Assembly: GCF_031769215.1 (NCBI RefSeq)
Contig: NW_026782393.1
Coordinates: 434,001-498,000, forward strand
Direction of reading: 5' to 3'
DNA: 64,000 nt
Origin: Ylistrum balloti
Lineage: Eukaryota
Shown piece by piece: positions 53 through 55,636 of the stretch; the stretch's first letter is position 1; every line of letters starts with the position of its first letter. Position numbers and translations under genes: made by a program. The notes beneath the pieces were generated by a model. The model worked only from the letters and a program-made list of their open reading frames with translations, had not been told where the DNA came from and did not search any database.

Positions 53-1418
53 TGAAGTAAAGTAACTGCTCCAAAATTCATTTCAGAGCGGAGGAAATAC
101 AACCGGTACCGCAGACATCTTGAAATAAGTAAATAAATAAATAAACCAGTACTATTTTTCGCGCGGTGACACATTGAATTGACCTCTGTATATTGACATT
201 CATAATAAAATGTTTCCATTTTTCATTGTAGATCGTAAGCTAGTAAAATGTTAAGATCTTAGGAGAAGATTTAAGAAGACTCTGGAAACGATTTTTCCCA
301 ACGAAACATACTCTAACCTTGTCTTAAGGTTTCCAATACAGAATAAAGTTCCAAATATAACGGAATCATAGTTTTATTGTACAAACTGTGCCAGTGCCAG
401 GAAACAAATTAACTTCATAGTTAAATGGATCATTATTCTGTACTATCGACATGAGGCACATCTTTTGTGGGCCAGAATTAAAGGTAATACGTATGGATGT
501 CACACCGACTCTCTAGAATCTAATAAGCCCACAGGAGGACGACATTCGGTAACATATTTTCAGTAAAAGATATCATGATTATGTTAGTTATATAGTACGA
601 TTTCTTTAGAAAATCATGATTTAAGACGGGACAAAAGACACACAAATGAACACATTTTAATACAATTTTAGAGTAAGATACAGCCAAACGATTGATTAAA
701 CTGCATAACAGCTATGTCGTTCTTTTAGGCTAAGGGCCGATTATTGAAGTCTAGGAAGCAACGGAGAAAATCCTTAGGGATCGGAAGAAACTAAAAAAAA
801 AAAAACTAGACAGGAGGTGCAATAAAAGAATAAAAAGATCTTTCAAATATCAGATAATTTTAGAACAGCGTTAAGCAAATGTGTATATTCTGAGCCGTGC
901 CACTATTCGAATGAATTAAAACGTGACATGCAGGATACGGCAAACTCCAGGGACTACAAGCAGTGCCTATCACTTGCTATATCTAAAATATTGTACAAAA
1001 GACACACAAGTAAATACGATAACCCCTATGTAGCTAAGTAATGATAAAAATATAATAATTCAAGCTTATTCTACCGATAACTGTAATATTAGTAAACATT
1101 CTGATAAGATAATCATTTTGATATACTGGTTATTCGGTTTTAGTTCTAGTTATAATCGTAGTATACTTATGATACTTCCAGCAAACTAATAATCCAAGTT
1201 AATTGATATCCCTAATATATTCAAAGCCCTAGTGCATGGACGTTTGTTTTCCTTATATGGATATGTACATACTCCATGTTTTATTTTCTTGGTACTTGAC
1301 TATTTTGCGCCACATATCTTTTATTGTTTGGTTTTTCTACTTTATTTATTTCTATATTTTCATCATAGTTTATTCCAGATGCAAAGACATGAATAAGTAA
1401 TCATAAAAACAGACTTAC

Positions 1419-1978
1419 GTCTTGTTTGCCATCAACGAACGAGTAGAAAATGTGAATGGTACCACGTCCATCGAACCCAGGCAAAGATTCTTTTTCGAAC
1501 ACCTCGACCATGTGACCTTTTGGCTGCACCCCTCTGACTATTCCGTAGACAACGTTACAAATAGGACATACTGGTTTAACACTGAAGCTATTTTTGGCAC
1601 ATGGCAGACACAGAACATGATGGCACTTGTTTAACTCCGTCCTTTCCTTTAGATCAATCTTTTCTAAACAAACTGGACAGTTTTCATCTGCTGGGTAACT
1701 CTTTACCATCTGTGACTTTACTGAATATCTTTCCATAAACGATTCATCCTCTCGTGTTTCTTTTTTCTCTGTTCTAAAATGGTGATTATGTTTCACTTCC
1801 GGTACAGAGTGAAGTTGTAGGCGCGTGATGACACTTTGAATTGTTTTGACAACACTTCGGTCAGGATGGACGATGTAAAGCATTCGTACACAGGGATTGT
1901 CTGCAGGATTTACGGAAAACTTCTGGATCTGCGTACATAGAAGGTCGATGACAAAATCCCTAGAGGCACCATTTCGTC
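1419..1978 (-). CDS. DTX3/DTX3L-like E3 ligase, coding exon 2: end of macrodomain, RING-HC finger and start of the Deltex C-terminal (DTC) domain
   Basis: Acceptor ttttcacattacag (AG 1980-1979); donor GAC|gtaagt (GT 1418-1417); 560 nt, phase 1 to phase 0. C3HC4 RING CPVCLEKIDLKERTELNKCHHVLCLPCAKNSFSVKPVCPIC, followed by DTC-type YGIVRGVQPKGHM and SLPGFDGRGTIHIFYSFVDGKQ. The rest of the DTC domain was not found in 1-1418, so it presumably lies left of the window. Confidence 0.9.
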
Positions 1979-2139
1979 CTGTAATGTGAAAACATATCAG
2001 ACATATGTATATTCCAGTACGCTTCATCCCACACGCTCGCCAACCCCGACATAATTCCCACATTAATTCAATTAGGGGGTCAAAACAGTTTATTTATTTA
2101 TAGTTTATTTATTTAGGGACTCACTCTCGTCTGACTTTT

Positions 2140-2330
2140 GGAAACGTTGCATTCTCCCTTCACTAACGTAGGTGTCTAGGGTTCGATTTCTAGAAAGGTA
2201 GAGACTATATACCACGTTCGACCACGTGTGTTTTCCACAATTAGTTTCCTCACAAAGTTAGACCCTCTTACGCTTCTACACGGAGCAACAAGAGAGGTTA
2301 ATATAAATTGGCAGTCAAACATCAGTGATT
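2140..2330 (+). mobile_element. Decayed tRNA-derived SINE-like fragment in the DTX-like intron
   Basis: B-box-like gggttcgatttc (~2178-2189) followed by a body resembling mollusc SINE cores (recognised from memory, not searched). Confidence 0.4.
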
Positions 2331-2691
2331 GACTTCTAGGATTCTGAATGGAAAGGAAAACCGTGAGGATGACATGGCTAAATAGCAGTTAGACGTTTCA
2401 AGAAAGGAAGAACCCAGCAACCAAGAACAAATTATTATATACCGGAATATATTCATTCCAGGTTATTTTCGCCCTTGTTCCATTATACACGAATTCGCCT
2501 CATGTTAATTGCGTTCACTAAGAATTATATAAAAAGGTGTAACAAATATTTGACCCTCTCCCCCATCTTGAATTCGCCTTCCCTTTCATGGACGAAAAGG
2601 GCAAAAAATATTAAAAATGCCCCTGTATACAGTGCTCTGCGTTTCATCAGTACAGTCAAACACTTAATTACAGAGTTATAAATTGATTTAC

Positions 2692-3931
2692 CAGTGCCAA
2701 GAAGTGGAATCGCCATAGAATTGAATCCCAGACAGTCGACCCGTTTCAAAAGTCTGCACAAGGCTTTGCTAAAATATTGACACCATGCGTCCTGGTCTAC
2801 TTCCCTTATCTTTGGAATGTTAATATGTGCCACGTTCTTACACTTCAATCTGCCTGCTCCGGGCGTGAAGATGAAATGCCAGGGTTTCAAAATCCCAATC
2901 ATGTTACTTGCTACCAGTTTTTGCTCTTCATATTTTTCACCTCCCTTGTGTGCTAGGTTTTTGGCCACCATACCAAACCCTTGAAGTGATTCATCCTCAC
3001 TCGACACGACAATGTCCACATCCAAATTTGCCATATCGCATTCTGTCGTGTTTACGCACAACTTCCATACAGGTGTCTTGGGCTTTGCCCCGTTATGATC
3101 GTTGGATTCTGCGGATCTGTTCAGAAAATTAACGGAAGCAATACTTCCGCTATGTCTATTTCCGCCTTGTTCATTTTCCTTGGATTTTTTATCTACGCCG
3201 GGTTGTTTGGATTCATACCCAGGAACACGTATTTCAGGACTTTCTGTCGTGCTGTGTTCAGTAACGCTGGCTATATCTTCATCTTCAGTTTCTTTCGGTC
3301 CTTTAAGGTCATACACAGGGACAACCACTCCGCGTTTCCCAGTCTTGATTGGGTCAGTATTTCCGGGTGTATCTTCGACGTAAGCATCTTTCGAGACTTT
3401 GAGATCAATCAACCTACTATTTCCCGACAGGTTCGGTTCAGTTAATCCAGATTTTACTCTGGCTTCGTGTCCTTCCGAATGATTTGGCTCGTGCTTGGTA
3501 TCGGCTTCCGTACTGGTATTACATTCAAACTCATTTTCGTTTGCTTTTTTCTGACCAGTCGTTATACTGCTATCTAGCGTGTTGCATGGTGTTATGCTGG
3601 ATTTGCCTTCAATTTCTGTCTCTTTCGATCTCGTTGGGTCATGCCCAAAAGTAATCTGTACATAATTTCCTATCGGGGTTTTTGCAATATTCTTCGATTT
3701 AACTTCAACTTTGGTTTCATGACCAGGAGTAATTTTTAAACTCCTTCCAAATGTGTTTTCTTTTGTCTTGCTGGAATAATCTTTTGCTGATTGTTGGTTG
3801 CGTCGAACCTGTTCAACACCCGGACATGTTTTGCTGTACCCGTTTTTCTTCTTCACCAATACAGAAAGATATGAAGTTTTTTTGCTCTTTGTTCTCTGCA
3901 CATCCTTTTCTGGCAAATTTTTACTTGCCAT
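2692..3931 (-). CDS. DTX3/DTX3L-like E3 ligase, coding exon 1: long low-complexity N-terminus plus macrodomain
   Basis: ATG 3931 has an in-frame stop just upstream and a tag/cag acceptor at 3960-3955 (5' UTR intron). Macro-like motifs DIVVSSEDESLQGFGMVAKNL, FTPGAGRLKCKNVAHINIP and SMAIPLLGTG. Donor ACT G|gtaaat (phase 1) joins in frame to the exon starting at 1978. Confidence 0.85.
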
Positions 3932-10205: not shown

Positions 10206-11459
10206 CTATTTGTTATACACCAATATAAAACCAGCAATCAGTCCGATCACAACCATTTCGGAGGTTACAAACAGAACATTGTCAATGAAAGTAACAATGT
10301 CACCCTTTTCAAGATCCGTTTGGTCATCAATAAAGCGTTTTATATTCTTGTAGTATTTCGGATCATTGTTGAAGTCCTCTGGCACGTTGTCTGTGGGGGC
10401 GTTTGAAACCACTGATTCTATATTACAGATTTCACGATCTTTTATCTTAAATCGCAAAACAATTCGTTTCAACCATCCTGGAAATTGGCTCACACTTGTT
10501 TTTGCATCCCAGCGTAGACTGAAAATTGTTAGTATTATCAGTACACAGCTGAATAACATTGCGACAAGTAGAAAGTAGGAAATTCCCGCCATCGGTTCGG
10601 ATACCTTTGGCATACTATCACTAACGATTGTCATGTATACAGCCAGAGACAGAAACATGGTGATGCTGTAGGAGATTCTCTCACCAGATGCGGCCGGCAG
10701 GAGAAACACAAATGGATGCAGGAAACACAGTATATACACGGGCATTATCATGGAAAAGATGAAGTATACTGATTTTCTTGTCAAAGAAATTTTATACTCG
10801 ATGACACTGCTTTCATCGCTTTCAGGCATGTTTGCTGAGATACTCTCAACATTCCATTCACCATTTGGGCTTAAATACTGCATGTTGTATCGTGGTTGTA
10901 AGAATGAAAGCTGTATTTCTGAAGCAACATAGCCCCATGGTACTATCAATAAAGAACACTTCTGTGAGTCGTTAGGGAAATTTGTCATATCAATTTCACA
11001 AGTTGATCTTATCATCTTTCCTGGGTTTACAAGAATGTAACCGGAATTATAAATTCTTGCATCAAAATCAGAGATATCAAATTTTTCCATGTTTGCCGAA
11101 GAGGATAACAGAAAAATTTTCGGTGCCCAAATCTTCGAAGAATTCACCATTACAGTTTGTATACCGCCATAGTCGTCTGGTTGCCAAGACAACCTGAAAT
11201 CCTTCCACAGCATATTGAGTCCTCCACTCAAAGTTATAGAACTAGCCAGTTCGTCAACATCGAGAATGGAGAAAAGAAAAAGAGTCGTGTTTACTAGAAC
11301 TGTGTCCTCCAAGTTCCTAGCGGGACGTAAATCTCTACTGTAGTTAGAGAAGATATTATCCATCAGTCGAGTCATGTGCTCGAAGGTTCCGACAGCATAC
11401 TCTATCGGGAGGCACTGTAATATCATAACTAGGATAAGGAGGGATTTATTTACCTTCAT
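10206..11459 (-). CDS. nAChR-like Cys-loop ligand-gated ion channel subunit (non-alpha type), single coding exon, 417 aa
   Basis: First ATG is at 11459 (the track start is TTG). Signal peptide; Cys-loop CEIDMTNFPNDSQKC; four TM segments; cation-type SGERISY before M2; no vicinal cysteines in loop C. AATAAA at ~10031-10026. Confidence 0.93.
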   Translation of the reverse strand: MKVNKSLLILVMILQCLPIEYAVGTFEHMTRLMDNIFSNYSRDLRPARNLEDTVLVNTTLFLFSILDVDELASSITLSGGLNMLWKDFRLSWQPDDYGGIQTVMVNSSKIWAPKIFLLSSSANMEKFDISDFDARIYNSGYILVNPGKMIRSTCEIDMTNFPNDSQKCSLLIVPWGYVASEIQLSFLQPRYNMQYLSPNGEWNVESISANMPESDESSVIEYKISLTRKSVYFIFSMIMPVYILCFLHPFVFLLPAASGERISYSITMFLSLAVYMTIVSDSMPKVSEPMAGISYFLLVAMLFSCVLIILTIFSLRWDAKTSVSQFPGWLKRIVLRFKIKDREICNIESVVSNAPTDNVPEDFNNDPKYYKNIKRFIDDQTDLEKGDIVTFIDNVLFVTSEMVVIGLIAGFILVYNK

Positions 11460-12941
11460 TCTCAACTGTTTTAAGCTTACTACCTTAAGATGCCACTCTG
11501 AATAGGATTTTCGATATCATCCGACAACGAGAGTCACACTTGGTTCACTTCATATAGGCTCCTAAAAATGGATGAAATGCATTGAATAATATTTAATTTA
11601 ATTTAAGAATAGATATAGAATATTTTTTCAATTATATCACTATGATGACCGTAAAGTTTCCCCGTAATTTGCATCAACTTGCATCTTTTGAAACCTCATG
11701 TTACGAGTTTGTCCGTCAATTGACATTTTTCAGGAAAATTGTGATGATTGGAACAAGCCCTTAAATATCGGGAACTGAAACATGTACATACCCAAGGTTT
11801 GGGATGTTGGTAAGTAATTTCACGATCACAACTAATTTCATATCACACAAGAAAACAACTAAATGGTAATAACGGTCATTCTATAACAAAATGAATAATA
11901 TCTGAACTGGAGCAATATTACTAACCATTTTAAACGGTATCAAGATGAAGATTTATTCAAATATGGACTGTTACTGACCTTGCGGTAACAAAAAGGTTCG
12001 GCTGATCCTACTTGTCTACAGGCCATAACGAACGATAAGTTACAACCCTATCGAATGAGAAATCAGTTTCGGCTTGATCGCTATCTTTATGGGTTGCCAT
12101 GGAAGCAACAATAATTATTATCAAATAGGATTTCATATCAAATTAATTACTTTCACATTCAGAATCATGAGAATAATGTCAAAAAAATATTCAGAATCAC
12201 AGAGGGACTATTGTTAAAATACACTCTGAATTAGACAGCAGAAATCATGATAAGATTATTTCCTGTAGGAAAAGATCGAGATGATCGGCTAATGTAGAAG
12301 AGCCTACGAAATACGTTTTTTTTTTTTTTTTGTCATAGAGTTTCCATGAGGGTACCAGTAATCTTGAATTTGTAGTGCTGAGTGCAATTTTAAACGACTA
12401 CTTTGTTTAATTTATATTGCTCAATGGAAATTTGAAGAATGATGAATAAAACAGAAAAGGAAGGAAATGTAGAATGGACATATCGCTTACGGTCTTATAT
12501 GCGCATGATTTCTTTTTCTTTTATTCAATATAGCGTAGTAAGTATGCTAATTGTAAGCTCTTAGCTAAAATTCATTGTGATATTTTCTTAGCTTTGGAGT
12601 GTTTTAATGTGGAATATATTTTACTGGTTGTTTCGGGATACGACTAATACCATTATTATGGGGGCACACAAGTTAAACCTCCCGTATGTTGTTCAGTGAT
12701 TTAGCCACCAACTTCTTCAATGAAATCCTTCCTTAAAATCTTAAAATGATAAAATAAACATGACAATCTTATCCTAAAAAAGAGACGACGTCGAAGTTGC
12801 TGTTTGAACAATATTACGATGTCACCGCAACATTAAAATGAGTTATGATAATCTGCTCCATGTTTTCAAATAGACCAATATGTTGCCAATCACTTGCATG
12901 CTATTGGATGACTTATCTGCTCACCTACTCAGTATGATAAA

Positions 12942-14210
12942 TCATCTGTAAAACCTAATAGCAAATCCACTAATTAATCCAGTAACTACTATTTCCGTGG
13001 TCACGAATAAAGCATTGTCAATGAAATCGACAACGTCTTTCTTTTGTAGATCCGTCTTTTCATTCACAAAATGGTTTCCTTTGTCCTCAGATGCAATGTT
13101 GACATCGGGTTCTTCAGACATGTTTGAGCTAGAGTTATTTGCGATAGAATTTTTGTGAGCGAGTGATTTATTACAAAATATTTTCTTTTCTTTTTTCTTC
13201 AATCGCAATACGATTATTTTCAACCATTTTGGAAATTGCTTCGTATCAGTAACTGCATCCCAGCGTAGACTGAAAATTGTTAGTATTATCAGCACACAGC
13301 TGAGTAACATTGCGACAAGTAGAAAGTAGGAAATTCCCGCCATCGGTTCGGATACCTTTGGCATACTATCACTAACGATTGTCATGTATACAGCCAGAGA
13401 CAGAAACATAGTGATGCTGTAGGAGATTCTCTCACCAGATGCGGCCGGCAGAAGAAACACAAATGGATGCAGGAAACACAGTATATACACGGGCACTGCC
13501 ATTGACATCATGAAATATGCTGACCTTCTTGTCAAAATGATAGTATAAACGAGAGCACTGGTTCCGTTTTCATGTTCAGGAAACTTTCCCGGTGAGATGC
13601 TATCAACATTCCATTCACCATTTGGGCTTAAGAAACCGAGATCGAAGCTTGGGTCAAGATAGGAAAGTTTTATTTCTTTAGTGTAGTATCCCCAAGCTAT
13701 TAGAGACATATGACATGTCTGTGAGTCGGTAGGGAAGTTCGTCATATCAACAACACACGAACACTTAAACACCTTTCCTGGACTCACAAGCATTACACCA
13801 TGATTGTTTATTCTGATGTCAAAATCATTCATACTCAACCTTTCTATGTCTGCTGTAGAAGAGAACTGGAAAATTTTCGGTGTCCAAACCTTAGATGAAT
13901 TCACCATTATGCTCGGTATGCCACCGTAGCTGTCTGGTTGCCACATTAGCCGAATATCTGTCCACATCACATTTATTCCTCCACTCAGAATAAGAGACCC
14001 AGCCAATTCGTCAACGTCATGAACGGTGAGAATATAAAATGATACGTTAACAACAACTGAGTCCTCCCATTTCTTGGTGGGACGTATCTCTGTTCTATAG
14101 TTAGAGAACATGTCGTCCATCAGTCGAGTCATGTTTGCTATGTTACCAGTCACGTGTAGTATCACGTGACAATAAGATATTAATAGAATGATGATATCTG
14201 CTCCTTTCAT
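12942..14210 (-). CDS. nAChR-like Cys-loop ligand-gated ion channel subunit (non-alpha type), tandem paralog, 422 aa
   Basis: Signal peptide; Cys-loop CVVDMTNFPTDSQTC; M1-M4; SGERISY; no loop-C CC motif; colinear with the 10206-11459 paralog. Confidence 0.93.
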   Translation of the reverse strand: MKGADIIILLISYCHVILHVTGNIANMTRLMDDMFSNYRTEIRPTKKWEDSVVVNVSFYILTVHDVDELAGSLILSGGINVMWTDIRLMWQPDSYGGIPSIMVNSSKVWTPKIFQFSSTADIERLSMNDFDIRINNHGVMLVSPGKVFKCSCVVDMTNFPTDSQTCHMSLIAWGYYTKEIKLSYLDPSFDLGFLSPNGEWNVDSISPGKFPEHENGTSALVYTIILTRRSAYFMMSMAVPVYILCFLHPFVFLLPAASGERISYSITMFLSLAVYMTIVSDSMPKVSEPMAGISYFLLVAMLLSCVLIILTIFSLRWDAVTDTKQFPKWLKIIVLRLKKKEKKIFCNKSLAHKNSIANNSSSNMSEEPDVNIASEDKGNHFVNEKTDLQKKDVVDFIDNALFVTTEIVVTGLISGFAIRFYR

Positions 14211-19089: not shown

Positions 19090-20280
19090 GTTTATGACCT
19101 ATGAGGAAATCTTGTACTTAACATCTCCTTCAGGTACAATGACTAACGCGAAGAGATGAAAACCATGTTCCGAACAAATTTTGAAAATCTACTTTGGAAA
19201 ACTAAATATATCAAAGGAAATGTCAGCGAAAACCGATAGTGTTCTACCAGTGACATTTTAGACGTTGGCAATCATTCAGGGACAATTACTCTCAGCGCTG
19301 GATTGGTTGTTTCCACCAATTCCCAATTGTCATAAGAACCTTAGAATATCAGTGTAACAGAGACCATTATTTATTTCAATGCCTCCGCTAGGAATCGAAT
19401 CCAGGACCCCTGACTTACTATTTATTAGCCGAGTGGAATATTGCGGTTAGTATTTTACCAAGGTTACATCAGGGATAACACATGATATCGGGAATTCCTG
19501 AAAGATTAGGAGACTTTCCTCATTTCTGTTATTATGTACTCTAGATAACGGAGATGTTTGGTTCGGAACAATTCGACGTGTGATGAAATGCCTCTAATTG
19601 TTCTGAAGCAAGGTCCGTCCTGACAGCAACAAATATAGATGCTGTCTATGATCAGGCCGTGAGTTGTCATTTTTAGTAACACTATTGAAGACGGAAAATT
19701 TCATTCCTGAATTGTATATTCAAAACTGCAGCAAAATCTAAAGGGGAAACATTTTGTCATGCACGCGATCATGGGCTACAATAGAAGCTTGCCGAATCAG
19801 AAAGGGGTGATTTATTATTTCATTCTGCTGGCCTTCCCATGTATGTTTTCTTTCTTCAATGTTCAAATGCTCTGTATATTGCAAATAGTTTTGAATTTCC
19901 TTCTATGCTAACACGTTCCTAATCAATCCACTCTCGTTGGCAGCTTTCCAATTCTCCAAATTAGATCCACTACACGTGGAAACTGGGAAGATTGTTAGGA
20001 GTCGTCCTATTGGCACGAGAGAAAGAAATAGTGCTCACAATGTCGAGTCTGGCGATTTCGTCCTGTATGCCCGTCAATGTTCCATAGTCGCGGCAGAATT
20101 CAGCACTTTTGGAGGATGTTTTAGACTAGTTCCAGAATACCATTTACAAAATTTCAATGAGACAAAATACTGTGATATAGAGTAGGTTCTCAAAATCTGA
20201 GCGAGTCCCAATGGAAAAGTGCAGTCCAGGACTCAATTATCATTCCAAAATATCCCTGATAATTCTAGAATTCCTTTGAG
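19090..20280 (+). pseudogene. Heavily decayed third nAChR-like paralog, in the opposite orientation
   Basis: Colinear remnants in different frames: ILDVGNHSGTITLSAGL (19255), LDNGDVW...C (19541-19591), IMGYNRSL..IYYFHSAGLPMYVFFL (19768-19857), ISFYANTFL (19895), IVLTMSSL (20028). Spacing matches the intact paralogs. Confidence 0.7.
19380..19420 (-). mobile_element. tRNA-derived SINE head fragment inserted in the pseudogene
   Basis: Reverse complement contains B-box-like GGATTCGATTCC within agtaagtcaggggtcctggattcgattcctagcggaggca. Confidence 0.5.
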
Positions 20281-55495: not shown

Positions 55496-55636
55496 NNNNN
55501 NNNNNNNNNNNNNNNNNNNNNNNNNNNNNNNNNNNNNNNNNNNNNNNNNNNNNNNNNNNNNNNNNNNNNNNNNNNNNNNNNNNNNNNNNNNNNNNNNNNN
55601 NNNNNNNNNNNNNNNNNNNNNNNNNNNNNNNNNNNN
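55496..55636. other. Assembly gap (141 N)
   Basis: Run of n in the sequence. Confidence 1.

What the first reader, a model, noticed from the sequence alone, without database searches (positions are those of the whole stretch)
10206..14210. Receptors lack the acetylcholine-binding signature: candidate chemosensory Cys-loop channels
Seen: the Cys-loop and loop-B Trp (VPWGY, IAWGY) are kept. Loop A has no Tyr (WAPKIFLLSS, WTPKIFQFSS), and loop C has neither the vicinal Cys pair nor the first Tyr and differs between paralogs (SANMPESDESSVIEY vs PGKFPEHENGTSALVY). The M2 entry SGER is cation-type. Known: nAChR-like genes are greatly expanded in bivalves, and cephalopod chemotactile receptors are ACh-insensitive nAChR derivatives. 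Inference: these may be environmental-ligand-gated cation channels rather than synaptic nAChR subunits.
Basis: partly seen in the sequence, partly recalled or inferred. Interest (0 to 1): 0.72.

Follow-up and report, generated by a model that had tools for sequence, protein, structure and literature searches.

The report
Scallop orphan nicotinic-type channel gene pair
Two neighbouring single-exon scallop genes encode nicotinic-receptor-like cation channel subunits that have lost almost the whole acetylcholine pocket; they belong to a bivalve-wide gene expansion already described, and a chemosensory role is still untested.

Summary
Two intact intronless genes on the minus strand (10206-11459, 417 aa; 12942-14210, 422 aa) encode complete Cys-loop receptor subunits. 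Against canonical references they keep only the loop-B Trp of the five-residue acetylcholine aromatic box. Loop D Trp is Gly, loop A Tyr is Leu or Phe, and loop C lacks both Tyr and the Cys pair and is about 5-7 residues shorter. The pore is cation-type (-1' Glu, 9' Leu, 20' Asp).

Both genes are under purifying selection (extracellular-domain dN/dS 0.34). A 242-nt pore tract has been homogenised by gene conversion. The genes lie in a scallop-only clade nested in a bivalve-only clade of at least 111 proteins with the same losses, apart from the canonical nicotinic rows I could include.

This class is published: Jiao 2019 (PMC6896357), De Gieter 2023 (PMC10338036), and MolluscaGenes 2026 (PMC13174522), which already raises the non-acetylcholine and chemosensory idea. 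This scan also found it elsewhere in this genome (s1-258787, s1-238081).

I found no link to cephalopod chemotactile receptors. Verdict: a new member of a known kind; the chemosensory reading stays speculative (about 0.2).

The parts
10206..11459 (-). ORF1: intronless Cys-loop receptor subunit gene, 417 aa from the first ATG (the ORF listing starts 2 codons earlier at a TTG, 11465). Hydrophobic N-terminal stretch that looks like a signal peptide, extracellular domain, M1-M3, short M3-M4 loop, M4.
   Evidence: ORF; Pfam LBD and membrane domains; AlphaFold2 model with mean pLDDT 89.9 and the expected strands and four transmembrane helices; best solved-structure matches are nicotinic alpha subunits, Z about 30.
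12942..14210 (-). ORF2: tandem paralog, 422 aa, 57% identical to ORF1.
   Evidence: ORF; Pfam; BLASTP 57% identity, E 1e-176.
10503..10744 (-). M1-M3 gene-conversion tract in ORF1: 242 nt with only 4 differences from ORF2.
   Evidence: Difference map. dS is 0.07-0.09 in M1-M3 against 0.87 in the extracellular domain.
13254..13495 (-). The matching M1-M3 conversion tract in ORF2.
10794..10847 (-). Loop C region of ORF1 (ESISANMPESDESSVIEY): no Tyr190, no Cys pair, Tyr198 replaced by Ser, hairpin shortened.
   Evidence: Alignments to canonical subunits.
10929..10943 (-). Loop B of ORF1 (VPWGY): the one aromatic-box residue retained (Trp149 equivalent), plus Tyr151.
10605..10688 (-). M2 pore helix of ORF1 (SGERISYSITMFLSLAVYMTIVSDSMP): -1' Glu, 9' Leu, 13' Val, 20' Asp.
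   Evidence: Family alignment; alignment to alpha1 M2.

Best explanation
These are two functional, tandemly duplicated subunit genes of the bivalve-specific, intronless nicotinic-receptor-like expansion.

Shown:
- Each encodes a complete pentameric ligand-gated channel subunit with a cation-type pore.
- The ECD-TMD coupling elements are intact: the beta1-beta2 DVDE motif, the Cys-loop FPxD motif, the pre-M1 Arg and the M2-M3 Pro.
- The orthosteric site has lost four of the five acetylcholine aromatic-box residues on both faces.
- Loop C is shortened.

Inferred mechanism:
- The subunits assemble into cation channels, as homomers or with sister paralogs. These channels are not gated by acetylcholine at a canonical site.
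- A different ligand gates them, contacting the retained loop-B Trp in an enlarged, more aliphatic pocket.
- The extracellular domains of the paralogs diverge, most at loop C in this pair, and tune ligand specificity.
- The pore module M1-M3 is kept nearly identical by strong purifying selection and repeated gene conversion.
- Whether the ligand is environmental or endogenous is not known.
For: - The ORFs are intact although the duplication is old. ECD dS is 0.87, and no similarity remains outside the coding sequence.
- ECD dN/dS is 0.34 (Nei-Gojobori, JC-corrected). A Fisher test on rounded difference and site counts gives p = 8e-9 against neutrality.
- M1-M3 dN/dS is about 0.07 between species.
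- Pore and gating motifs are conserved across the family.
- The aromatic-box losses are shared by 111 bivalve relatives, while the loop-B Trp is kept in 99 of 111. The loss is therefore old and the genes have been maintained since.
- The binding loops A-F are as constrained as the scaffold when pooled (omega 0.20 against 0.19). They are strongly constrained in the Mizuhopecten pair (omega 0.13 overall; loop C 0.07) and in the Pecten/Argopecten orthologs (omega 0.12 overall; loop C 0.31). This argues that the loops still matter.
- The genes fall in scallop-only (SH-aLRT 99) and bivalve-only (97) clades, apart from the canonical rows.
- The position next to the Macro-RING-DTC gene is conserved in Mizuhopecten.
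- The model is confident and has the nicotinic fold.
- Published context: PMC6896357 (intronless tandem expansion; only 13 of 132 oyster genes keep a complete principal site) and PMC10338036 (Alpo4, a lophotrochozoan orphan insensitive to acetylcholine).
Against: - There is no functional or expression evidence for these genes.
- Jiao 2019 reports that intron-poor members are more often silent (<1 RPKM) than intron-rich ones.
- The loop-B Trp is kept in most nicotinic subunits whether or not they bind ligand, so it is not diagnostic.
- A short loop C without the Cys pair is also typical of non-alpha subunits.
- dS between species is saturated, so selection estimates are rough.
- No test for positive selection on pocket sites was possible.
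- My tree had no vertebrate or molluscan canonical beta subunits.
Confidence: 0.55

Rival explanations
1. Peripheral chemoreceptors. The channels sit in water-exposed sensory epithelia (mantle edge or tentacles, gill, larval foot) and are gated by environmental chemicals, a bivalve parallel to cephalopod chemotactile receptors.
For: - The features recall those reported for chemotactile receptors: intronless, in tandem, nicotinic-derived, acetylcholine box lost, cation pore (PMC11526382).
- Loop C evolves almost neutrally between the two window paralogs (omega about 0.96 over 20 codons).
- Gene turnover at the locus is fast. Copy number and orientation differ among four scallop genera.
- Jiao 2019 finds bivalve nicotinic-like expression highest in gill.
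Against: - No tissue data are available for these genes.
- No cephalopod protein appeared among the nearest relatives in a profile search.
- No chemotactile receptor structure appeared in the 60 listed of 373 PDB sequence matches or in the top 50 fold matches.
- Pooled binding-loop omega is 0.20, so there is no sign of diversifying selection.
- Three subclades of the local cluster have 1:1 orthologs across scallop genera. That is more conservative than typical chemoreceptor birth-and-death evolution.
Confidence: 0.2
2. Non-binding accessory (structural) subunits. They co-assemble with canonical alpha-type scallop subunits in acetylcholine-gated heteromers, as vertebrate beta1, beta3 and alpha5 do.
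For: - No Cys pair, a short loop C, and no binding residues on either face.
- The pore and the coupling elements are conserved, as an assembling subunit needs.
- The best sequence matches are canonical muscle and neuronal subunits.
Against: - At least 111 such genes were retrieved across bivalves, about 65 of them from scallops alone, far more than canonical partners would need. In oyster only 13 of 132 genes keep a complete principal site (PMC6896357).
- Binding loops are under purifying selection about as strong as the scaffold in two of three pairs. This is unexpected if the loops were idle.
- The family forms its own clade, separate from the canonical rows.
Confidence: 0.15
3. Silent or decaying retrogene copies with no present function.
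For: - Intron-poor bivalve members are more often unexpressed (PMC6896357).
- A neighbouring paralog has decayed in this window (19091-19371).
- A Pecten maximus neighbour (P0013) is frameshifted.
Against: - Both ORFs are intact after dS of about 0.9.
- ECD omega is 0.34, significantly below 1 (p = 8e-9).
- All gating and pore motifs are intact.
Confidence: 0.05

Closest known systems
Bivalve/lophotrochozoan expanded intronless nicotinic-receptor-like genes (Jiao et al. 2019, BMC Genomics, PMC6896357; 'molluscan-specific families' in De Gieter et al. 2023, PMC10338036)
   Same: Single-exon genes in a tandem array; full LBD and transmembrane architecture; most lack the alpha-type Cys pair and the principal binding residues; lineage-specific clades. 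The nearest relatives are annotated scallop proteins at 52-59% identity.
   Different: Nothing essential. Added here: the complementary-face Trp is also lost family-wide, and the pore module is repeatedly homogenised by gene conversion in three scallop lineages.
Cephalopod chemotactile receptors (CRT1 and others; van Giesen 2020, Allard 2023, as summarised in PMC11526382 and bioRxiv 10.1101/2025.03.03.641191)
   Same: Nicotinic-derived, intronless, tandemly expanded, acetylcholine signature lost, non-selective cation channel type.
   Different: No evidence of common descent beyond the nicotinic superfamily. No cephalopod sequence appeared among the nearest relatives. No chemotactile receptor appeared in the listed PDB sequence or fold matches. 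The reported chemotactile-receptor pocket is aromatic and hydrophobic (Y58, W122, F124, F192) and under positive selection; here the box positions hold small or aliphatic residues (Gly, Leu, Ser) and no positive selection was seen. Sensory expression and ligands are unknown here.
Alpo4, orphan nicotinic-like receptor of Alvinella pompejana (PDB 8bx5; PMC10338036)
   Same: Lophotrochozoan, homopentameric, no loop C Cys pair, insensitive to acetylcholine and serotonin, ligand unknown. It scores like alpha7 against ORF1 (E 1.7e-41).
   Different: Alpo4 keeps the aromatic residues (F103, W159, Y199, Y205, W65). The scallop proteins keep only the loop-B Trp.
Canonical non-alpha nicotinic subunits (vertebrate beta, gamma, delta, epsilon; echinoderm 'beta-2-like' rows P0191, P0193)
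   Same: No vicinal Cys pair; cation pore; loop-B Trp present.
   Different: The canonical non-alpha rows examined keep loop D Trp, loop A Asp89 and Tyr93, and both loop C Tyr (or Phe for the second). They lie in a different clade.

Membership tests
Cys-loop (pentameric ligand-gated) receptor superfamily | Extracellular beta-sandwich domain with a C-x13-C Cys-loop, followed by four transmembrane helices | tested here: met
   Pfam PF02931 and PF02932. The Cys-loops are CEIDMTNFPNDSQKC and CVVDMTNFPTDSQTC. The AlphaFold2 model has four transmembrane helices and matches nicotinic structures at Z about 30.
Nicotinic alpha subunit | Vicinal Cys pair (Cys192-Cys193) at the tip of loop C | tested here: not met
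   Neither ORF has a Cys in loop C. The hairpin is about 5-7 residues shorter than in canonical subunits.
Acetylcholine-binding nicotinic receptor (either face) | Aromatic box: loop A Tyr93, loop B Trp149, loop C Tyr190 and Tyr198, loop D Trp55 | tested here: not met
   Only Trp149 is kept. Tyr93 is Leu or Phe, Tyr190 is absent, Tyr198 is Ser or Thr, and Trp55 is Gly.
Cation-selective Cys-loop channel | -1' Glu in the M1-M2 linker with no -2' Pro / Pro-Ala-Arg motif; 9' Leu gate | tested here: met
   The sequence reads SGER-ISYSITMFL(9')SLAV(13')YMTIVSD(20'). Selectivity itself was not measured.
Bivalve intronless tandem nicotinic-like expansion (Jiao 2019) | Single coding exon, tandem arrangement, placement in a bivalve-specific clade | tested here: met
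   Uninterrupted ORFs lie 1.5 kb apart on the same strand. They fall in a scallop clade (SH-aLRT 99) inside a bivalve clade (97). All named relatives in the profile search are bivalves, apart from one canonical barnacle subunit far down the list.
Cephalopod chemotactile receptors | Membership of the chemotactile receptor clade | tested here: inconclusive
   No cephalopod protein was retrieved among relatives. No chemotactile receptor chain appeared in the listed PDB matches. No chemotactile receptor sequence was available to put in a tree. MolluscaGenes (PMC13174522) reports a 'CR-like' clade that includes bivalves; whether these genes belong to it is unknown.
Cephalopod chemotactile receptors | Expression in peripheral sensory cells and gating by environmental, poorly soluble ligands rather than acetylcholine | not testable with these tools

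The most novel reading that the evidence does not exclude
Bivalves independently turned a retroposed nicotinic receptor lineage into an ionotropic chemoreceptor repertoire. Tandem paralogs diversify their ligand-binding domains, while gene conversion keeps a common pore module so that the paralogs can co-assemble. This pair would be one such tuning unit, expressed at the mantle edge or gill.
Probability: 0.15. Interest if true: 0.75.

Novelty: new member of a known kind. Interest (0 to 1): 0.3.

Why it matters
Bivalves carry 100-200 nicotinic-like genes whose ligands are unknown. Showing that any of them is an environmental sensor would reveal a second, independent conversion of a neurotransmitter receptor into a chemoreceptor, after the cephalopod chemotactile receptors. 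It would also give a molecular handle on settlement and feeding cues in farmed shellfish.

This pair adds little beyond the published class. It is a clean, compact test case: two intact paralogs with divergent binding loops and a near-identical pore. They are suitable for oocyte expression singly and together.

Tried and rejected
No tissue or stage information was obtained.
- Placement relative to cephalopod chemotactile receptors: I could not obtain a chemotactile receptor sequence. The van Giesen 2020 and Allard 2023 papers are not held. The three word-based protein searches returned only scallop, cnidarian/deuterostome and bivalve proteins. The PDB sequence and fold lists are filled with canonical receptors. 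I can therefore only say that no special closeness was seen.
- Canonical vertebrate and molluscan beta subunits could not be added to the tree. The outgroups were cnidarian alpha9/10-like, ACR-16/alpha7-like, annelid, echinoderm and hemichordate alpha10/beta2-like rows, and one 5-HT3A-like row.
- Positive selection on pocket loops: only pairwise Nei-Gojobori estimates were possible. dS between species is saturated (>1.5). No omega above 1 was found.
- Orthology of ORF1 with P0003 and ORF2 with P0004, suggested by conserved position, was not recovered. Paralogs group by species even in an ECD-only tree, though weakly (88/88). Independent duplication and concerted evolution cannot be separated.
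- The big representative search (search of protein representatives) was not used, as the family was not in doubt.
- The protein atlas search added nothing.
- The N run at 55496-55636 was left untouched.
Full report
**What is there.**
- The minus strand of the window carries two uninterrupted ORFs, 10206-11465 and 12942-14210. They are among only five ORFs over 150 aa in 64 kb of AT-rich sequence.
- Both match the Pfam ligand-binding domain (E 1.5e-44 and 6.6e-41) and the transmembrane domain of neurotransmitter-gated channels.
- The ORF listing starts ORF1 at a bacterial TTG. The first ATG is at 11459 and gives a 417-aa protein. Both proteins then begin with a hydrophobic N-terminal stretch that looks like a signal peptide.
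- The database gene models for this genome (P0001, P0002; assembly GCA_031769215.1) start at an internal Met and omit that stretch.
- The two proteins are 57% identical.
- An AlphaFold2 model of ORF1 built with 70 relatives is confident (mean pLDDT 89.9). It shows the beta-sandwich, four membrane helices and a short M3-M4 loop.
- Its best solved-structure matches are muscle and neuronal nicotinic alpha subunits, followed by 5-HT3A (Foldseek E about 1e-30; VIA-align Z about 30, 25-28% identity).

**The binding-site observation.**
- Kept: the Cys-loop, loop B Trp149 and Tyr151.
- Lost on the principal face: loop A Tyr93 (Leu in ORF1, Phe in ORF2), the conserved loop A Asp89 (Lys), loop C Tyr190, and the Cys192-Cys193 pair.
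- Lost on the complementary face: loop D Trp55 (Gly).
- The stretch that holds the loop C hairpin, from the Trp of GEW to the pre-M1 Arg, is 24 and 26 residues against 30-31 in canonical subunits.
- So one of the five aromatic-box residues remains, and neither face is canonical.
- The pore is of the cation type: -1' Glu, 0' Arg, 2' Ser, 6' Thr, 9' Leu, 13' Val, 20' Asp, and no Pro-Ala-Arg motif.
- The coupling elements are present: beta1-beta2 DVDE, Cys-loop FPxD, pre-M1 Arg and the M2-M3 Pro.

**Relatives and phylogeny.**
- The word-based protein search found 86 relatives. Nearly all are annotated scallop proteins from Mizuhopecten, Pecten, Argopecten and Ylistrum, at 38-59% identity.
- A profile of the more distant members retrieved further proteins. 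Every named one is from a bivalve (Mercenaria, Mactra, Pinctada, Saccostrea, Crassostrea, Ruditapes, Mytilus, Potamilus), apart from one canonical barnacle subunit far down the list. No gastropod or cephalopod protein appeared.
- In a 93-row maximum-likelihood tree (quick search, SH-aLRT support only), ORF1 and ORF2 are sisters (98).
- They sit in an 8-row and then a 15-row scallop clade (98, 100), in a 65-row scallop-only clade (99), and in a 76-row clade of bivalve and unnamed metagenomic rows (97).
- The canonical cnidarian, ACR-16/alpha7-like and deuterostome alpha10/beta2-like rows lie outside.
- Across 111 family members, none has the loop D Trp or Tyr93, about one has a Cys pair, and 99 keep the loop-B Trp.
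- The losses are therefore ancestral to a family spread across the major bivalve lineages. They are not a peculiarity of this pair.

**Selection and gene conversion.**
- Between ORF1 and ORF2 the extracellular domain has dS 0.87 and dN 0.30, so omega is 0.34. A Fisher test on rounded counts gives p = 8e-9 against neutrality.
- No nucleotide similarity survives outside the coding regions. The duplication is old and both copies have been kept by selection.
- M1-M3 is different. Its dS is 0.07-0.09, and a 242-nt tract (10503-10744 against 13254-13495) has only four differences.
- Between species the same region has saturated dS (1.1-3), so this is gene conversion, not synonymous constraint.
- The pattern recurs in the Mizuhopecten pair (dS 0.22 against 1.01) and in the Argopecten pair (0.32 against 1.55).
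- The binding loops A-F, pooled over three independent pairs, have omega 0.20 against 0.19 for the scaffold.
- In the window pair the loops evolve faster (0.44 against 0.29), and loop C is near neutrality (0.96 over 20 codons, which is noisy).
- In the Mizuhopecten pair loop C is tightly conserved (0.07). There is no sign of omega above 1.

**Locus history.**
- In Mizuhopecten the same arrangement is found: two same-strand paralogs followed by the Macro-RING-DTC gene.
- In Pecten and Argopecten the neighbouring paralog is inverted, and Argopecten has a third, truncated copy.
- The Pecten neighbour P0013 is frameshifted.
- In the window a faint remnant on the plus strand (19091-19371) resembles the P0010 subclade (E 1e-4).
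- Although ORF1/P0003 and ORF2/P0004 match by position, paralogs group by species even in an ECD-only tree, with weak support (88/88). Independent duplication and concerted evolution cannot be told apart.

**What is known already.**
- Jiao et al. 2019 (PMC6896357) described 99-217 nicotinic-like genes in bivalves. They are mostly intronless or intron-poor and lie in tandem arrays.
- In that study only 33 of 132 oyster genes have the Cys pair and only 13 have a complete principal site. Expression is highest in gill.
- The authors suggested that LBD diversity broadened ligand specificity for monitoring the environment. They also noted that intron-poor members are more often silent.
- De Gieter et al. 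2023 (PMC10338036) placed Mizuhopecten and Pecten genes in 'molluscan-specific families'. They solved Alpo4, an annelid orphan insensitive to acetylcholine, and drew the parallel to chemotactile receptors.
- The MolluscaGenes preprint (PMC13174522) resolves 15 clades. It finds chemotactile receptors mostly in cephalopods, reports a 'CR-like' clade that includes bivalves, and proposes that divergent clades may add an ionotropic arm to chemosensation.
- This scan has also reported the same class elsewhere in this genome (s1-258787, s1-238081), and the pore conversion at this locus (s1-244094).

**Interpretation.**
- Most likely (0.55), these are functional subunits of cation channels gated by something other than acetylcholine. 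Divergent extracellular domains provide tuning, and the pore module is shared and kept alike by conversion.
- Whether the ligand is environmental (0.2 as a separate reading) or endogenous is open.
- An accessory-subunit role in acetylcholine-gated heteromers (0.15) is not excluded. It fits poorly with the size of the family and with the constraint on the binding loops.
- Silent retrogenes (0.05) are unlikely given the selection signal.

**Limits.**
- No chemotactile receptor sequence and no canonical molluscan or vertebrate beta sequence could be included in trees.
- dS is saturated between genera.
- The assembly gap at 55496-55636 was left as it is.

Noticed in passing
window 10503-10744 and 13254-13495; L002 (Mizuhopecten), L004 (Argopecten): Gene conversion confined to M1-M3 recurs independently in three scallop lineages. 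Within-species dS in M1-M3 is 0.09, 0.22 and 0.32, against 0.88, 1.01 and 1.55 in the extracellular domain. Between-species dS in M1-M3 is saturated.
   Followed up: yes
window 19091-19371 (+): A weak translated match (E 1e-4, aa 13-108) to P0010, a Mizuhopecten member of the same local cluster, plus weaker collinear hits up to 20245. This is probably the remnant of a decayed, inverted third paralog. Pecten and Argopecten have an inverted neighbour at the corresponding place.
   Followed up: partly
window 11378-11459 and 14133-14210; database models P0001, P0002: The public gene models for both genes start at the internal Met of 'MTRLMD'. They omit the hydrophobic N-terminal stretch (28 and 26 residues) encoded in frame upstream from a proper ATG.
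   Followed up: partly
L003:2882-3957 (Pecten maximus): The neighbouring paralog P0013 ('LOW QUALITY PROTEIN') does not translate cleanly from the genome: its length is not a multiple of 3 and a naive translation has 13 stops. It is a pseudogene or an assembly error.
   Followed up: no
window 1401-3931 (-); L002:15177-21260: The Macro-RING-DTC (Deltex-like) gene lies next to the receptor pair in both this genome and Mizuhopecten. This conserved synteny anchors the locus.
   Followed up: partly
window 55496-55636: A run of N (assembly gap or masked stretch).
   Followed up: no
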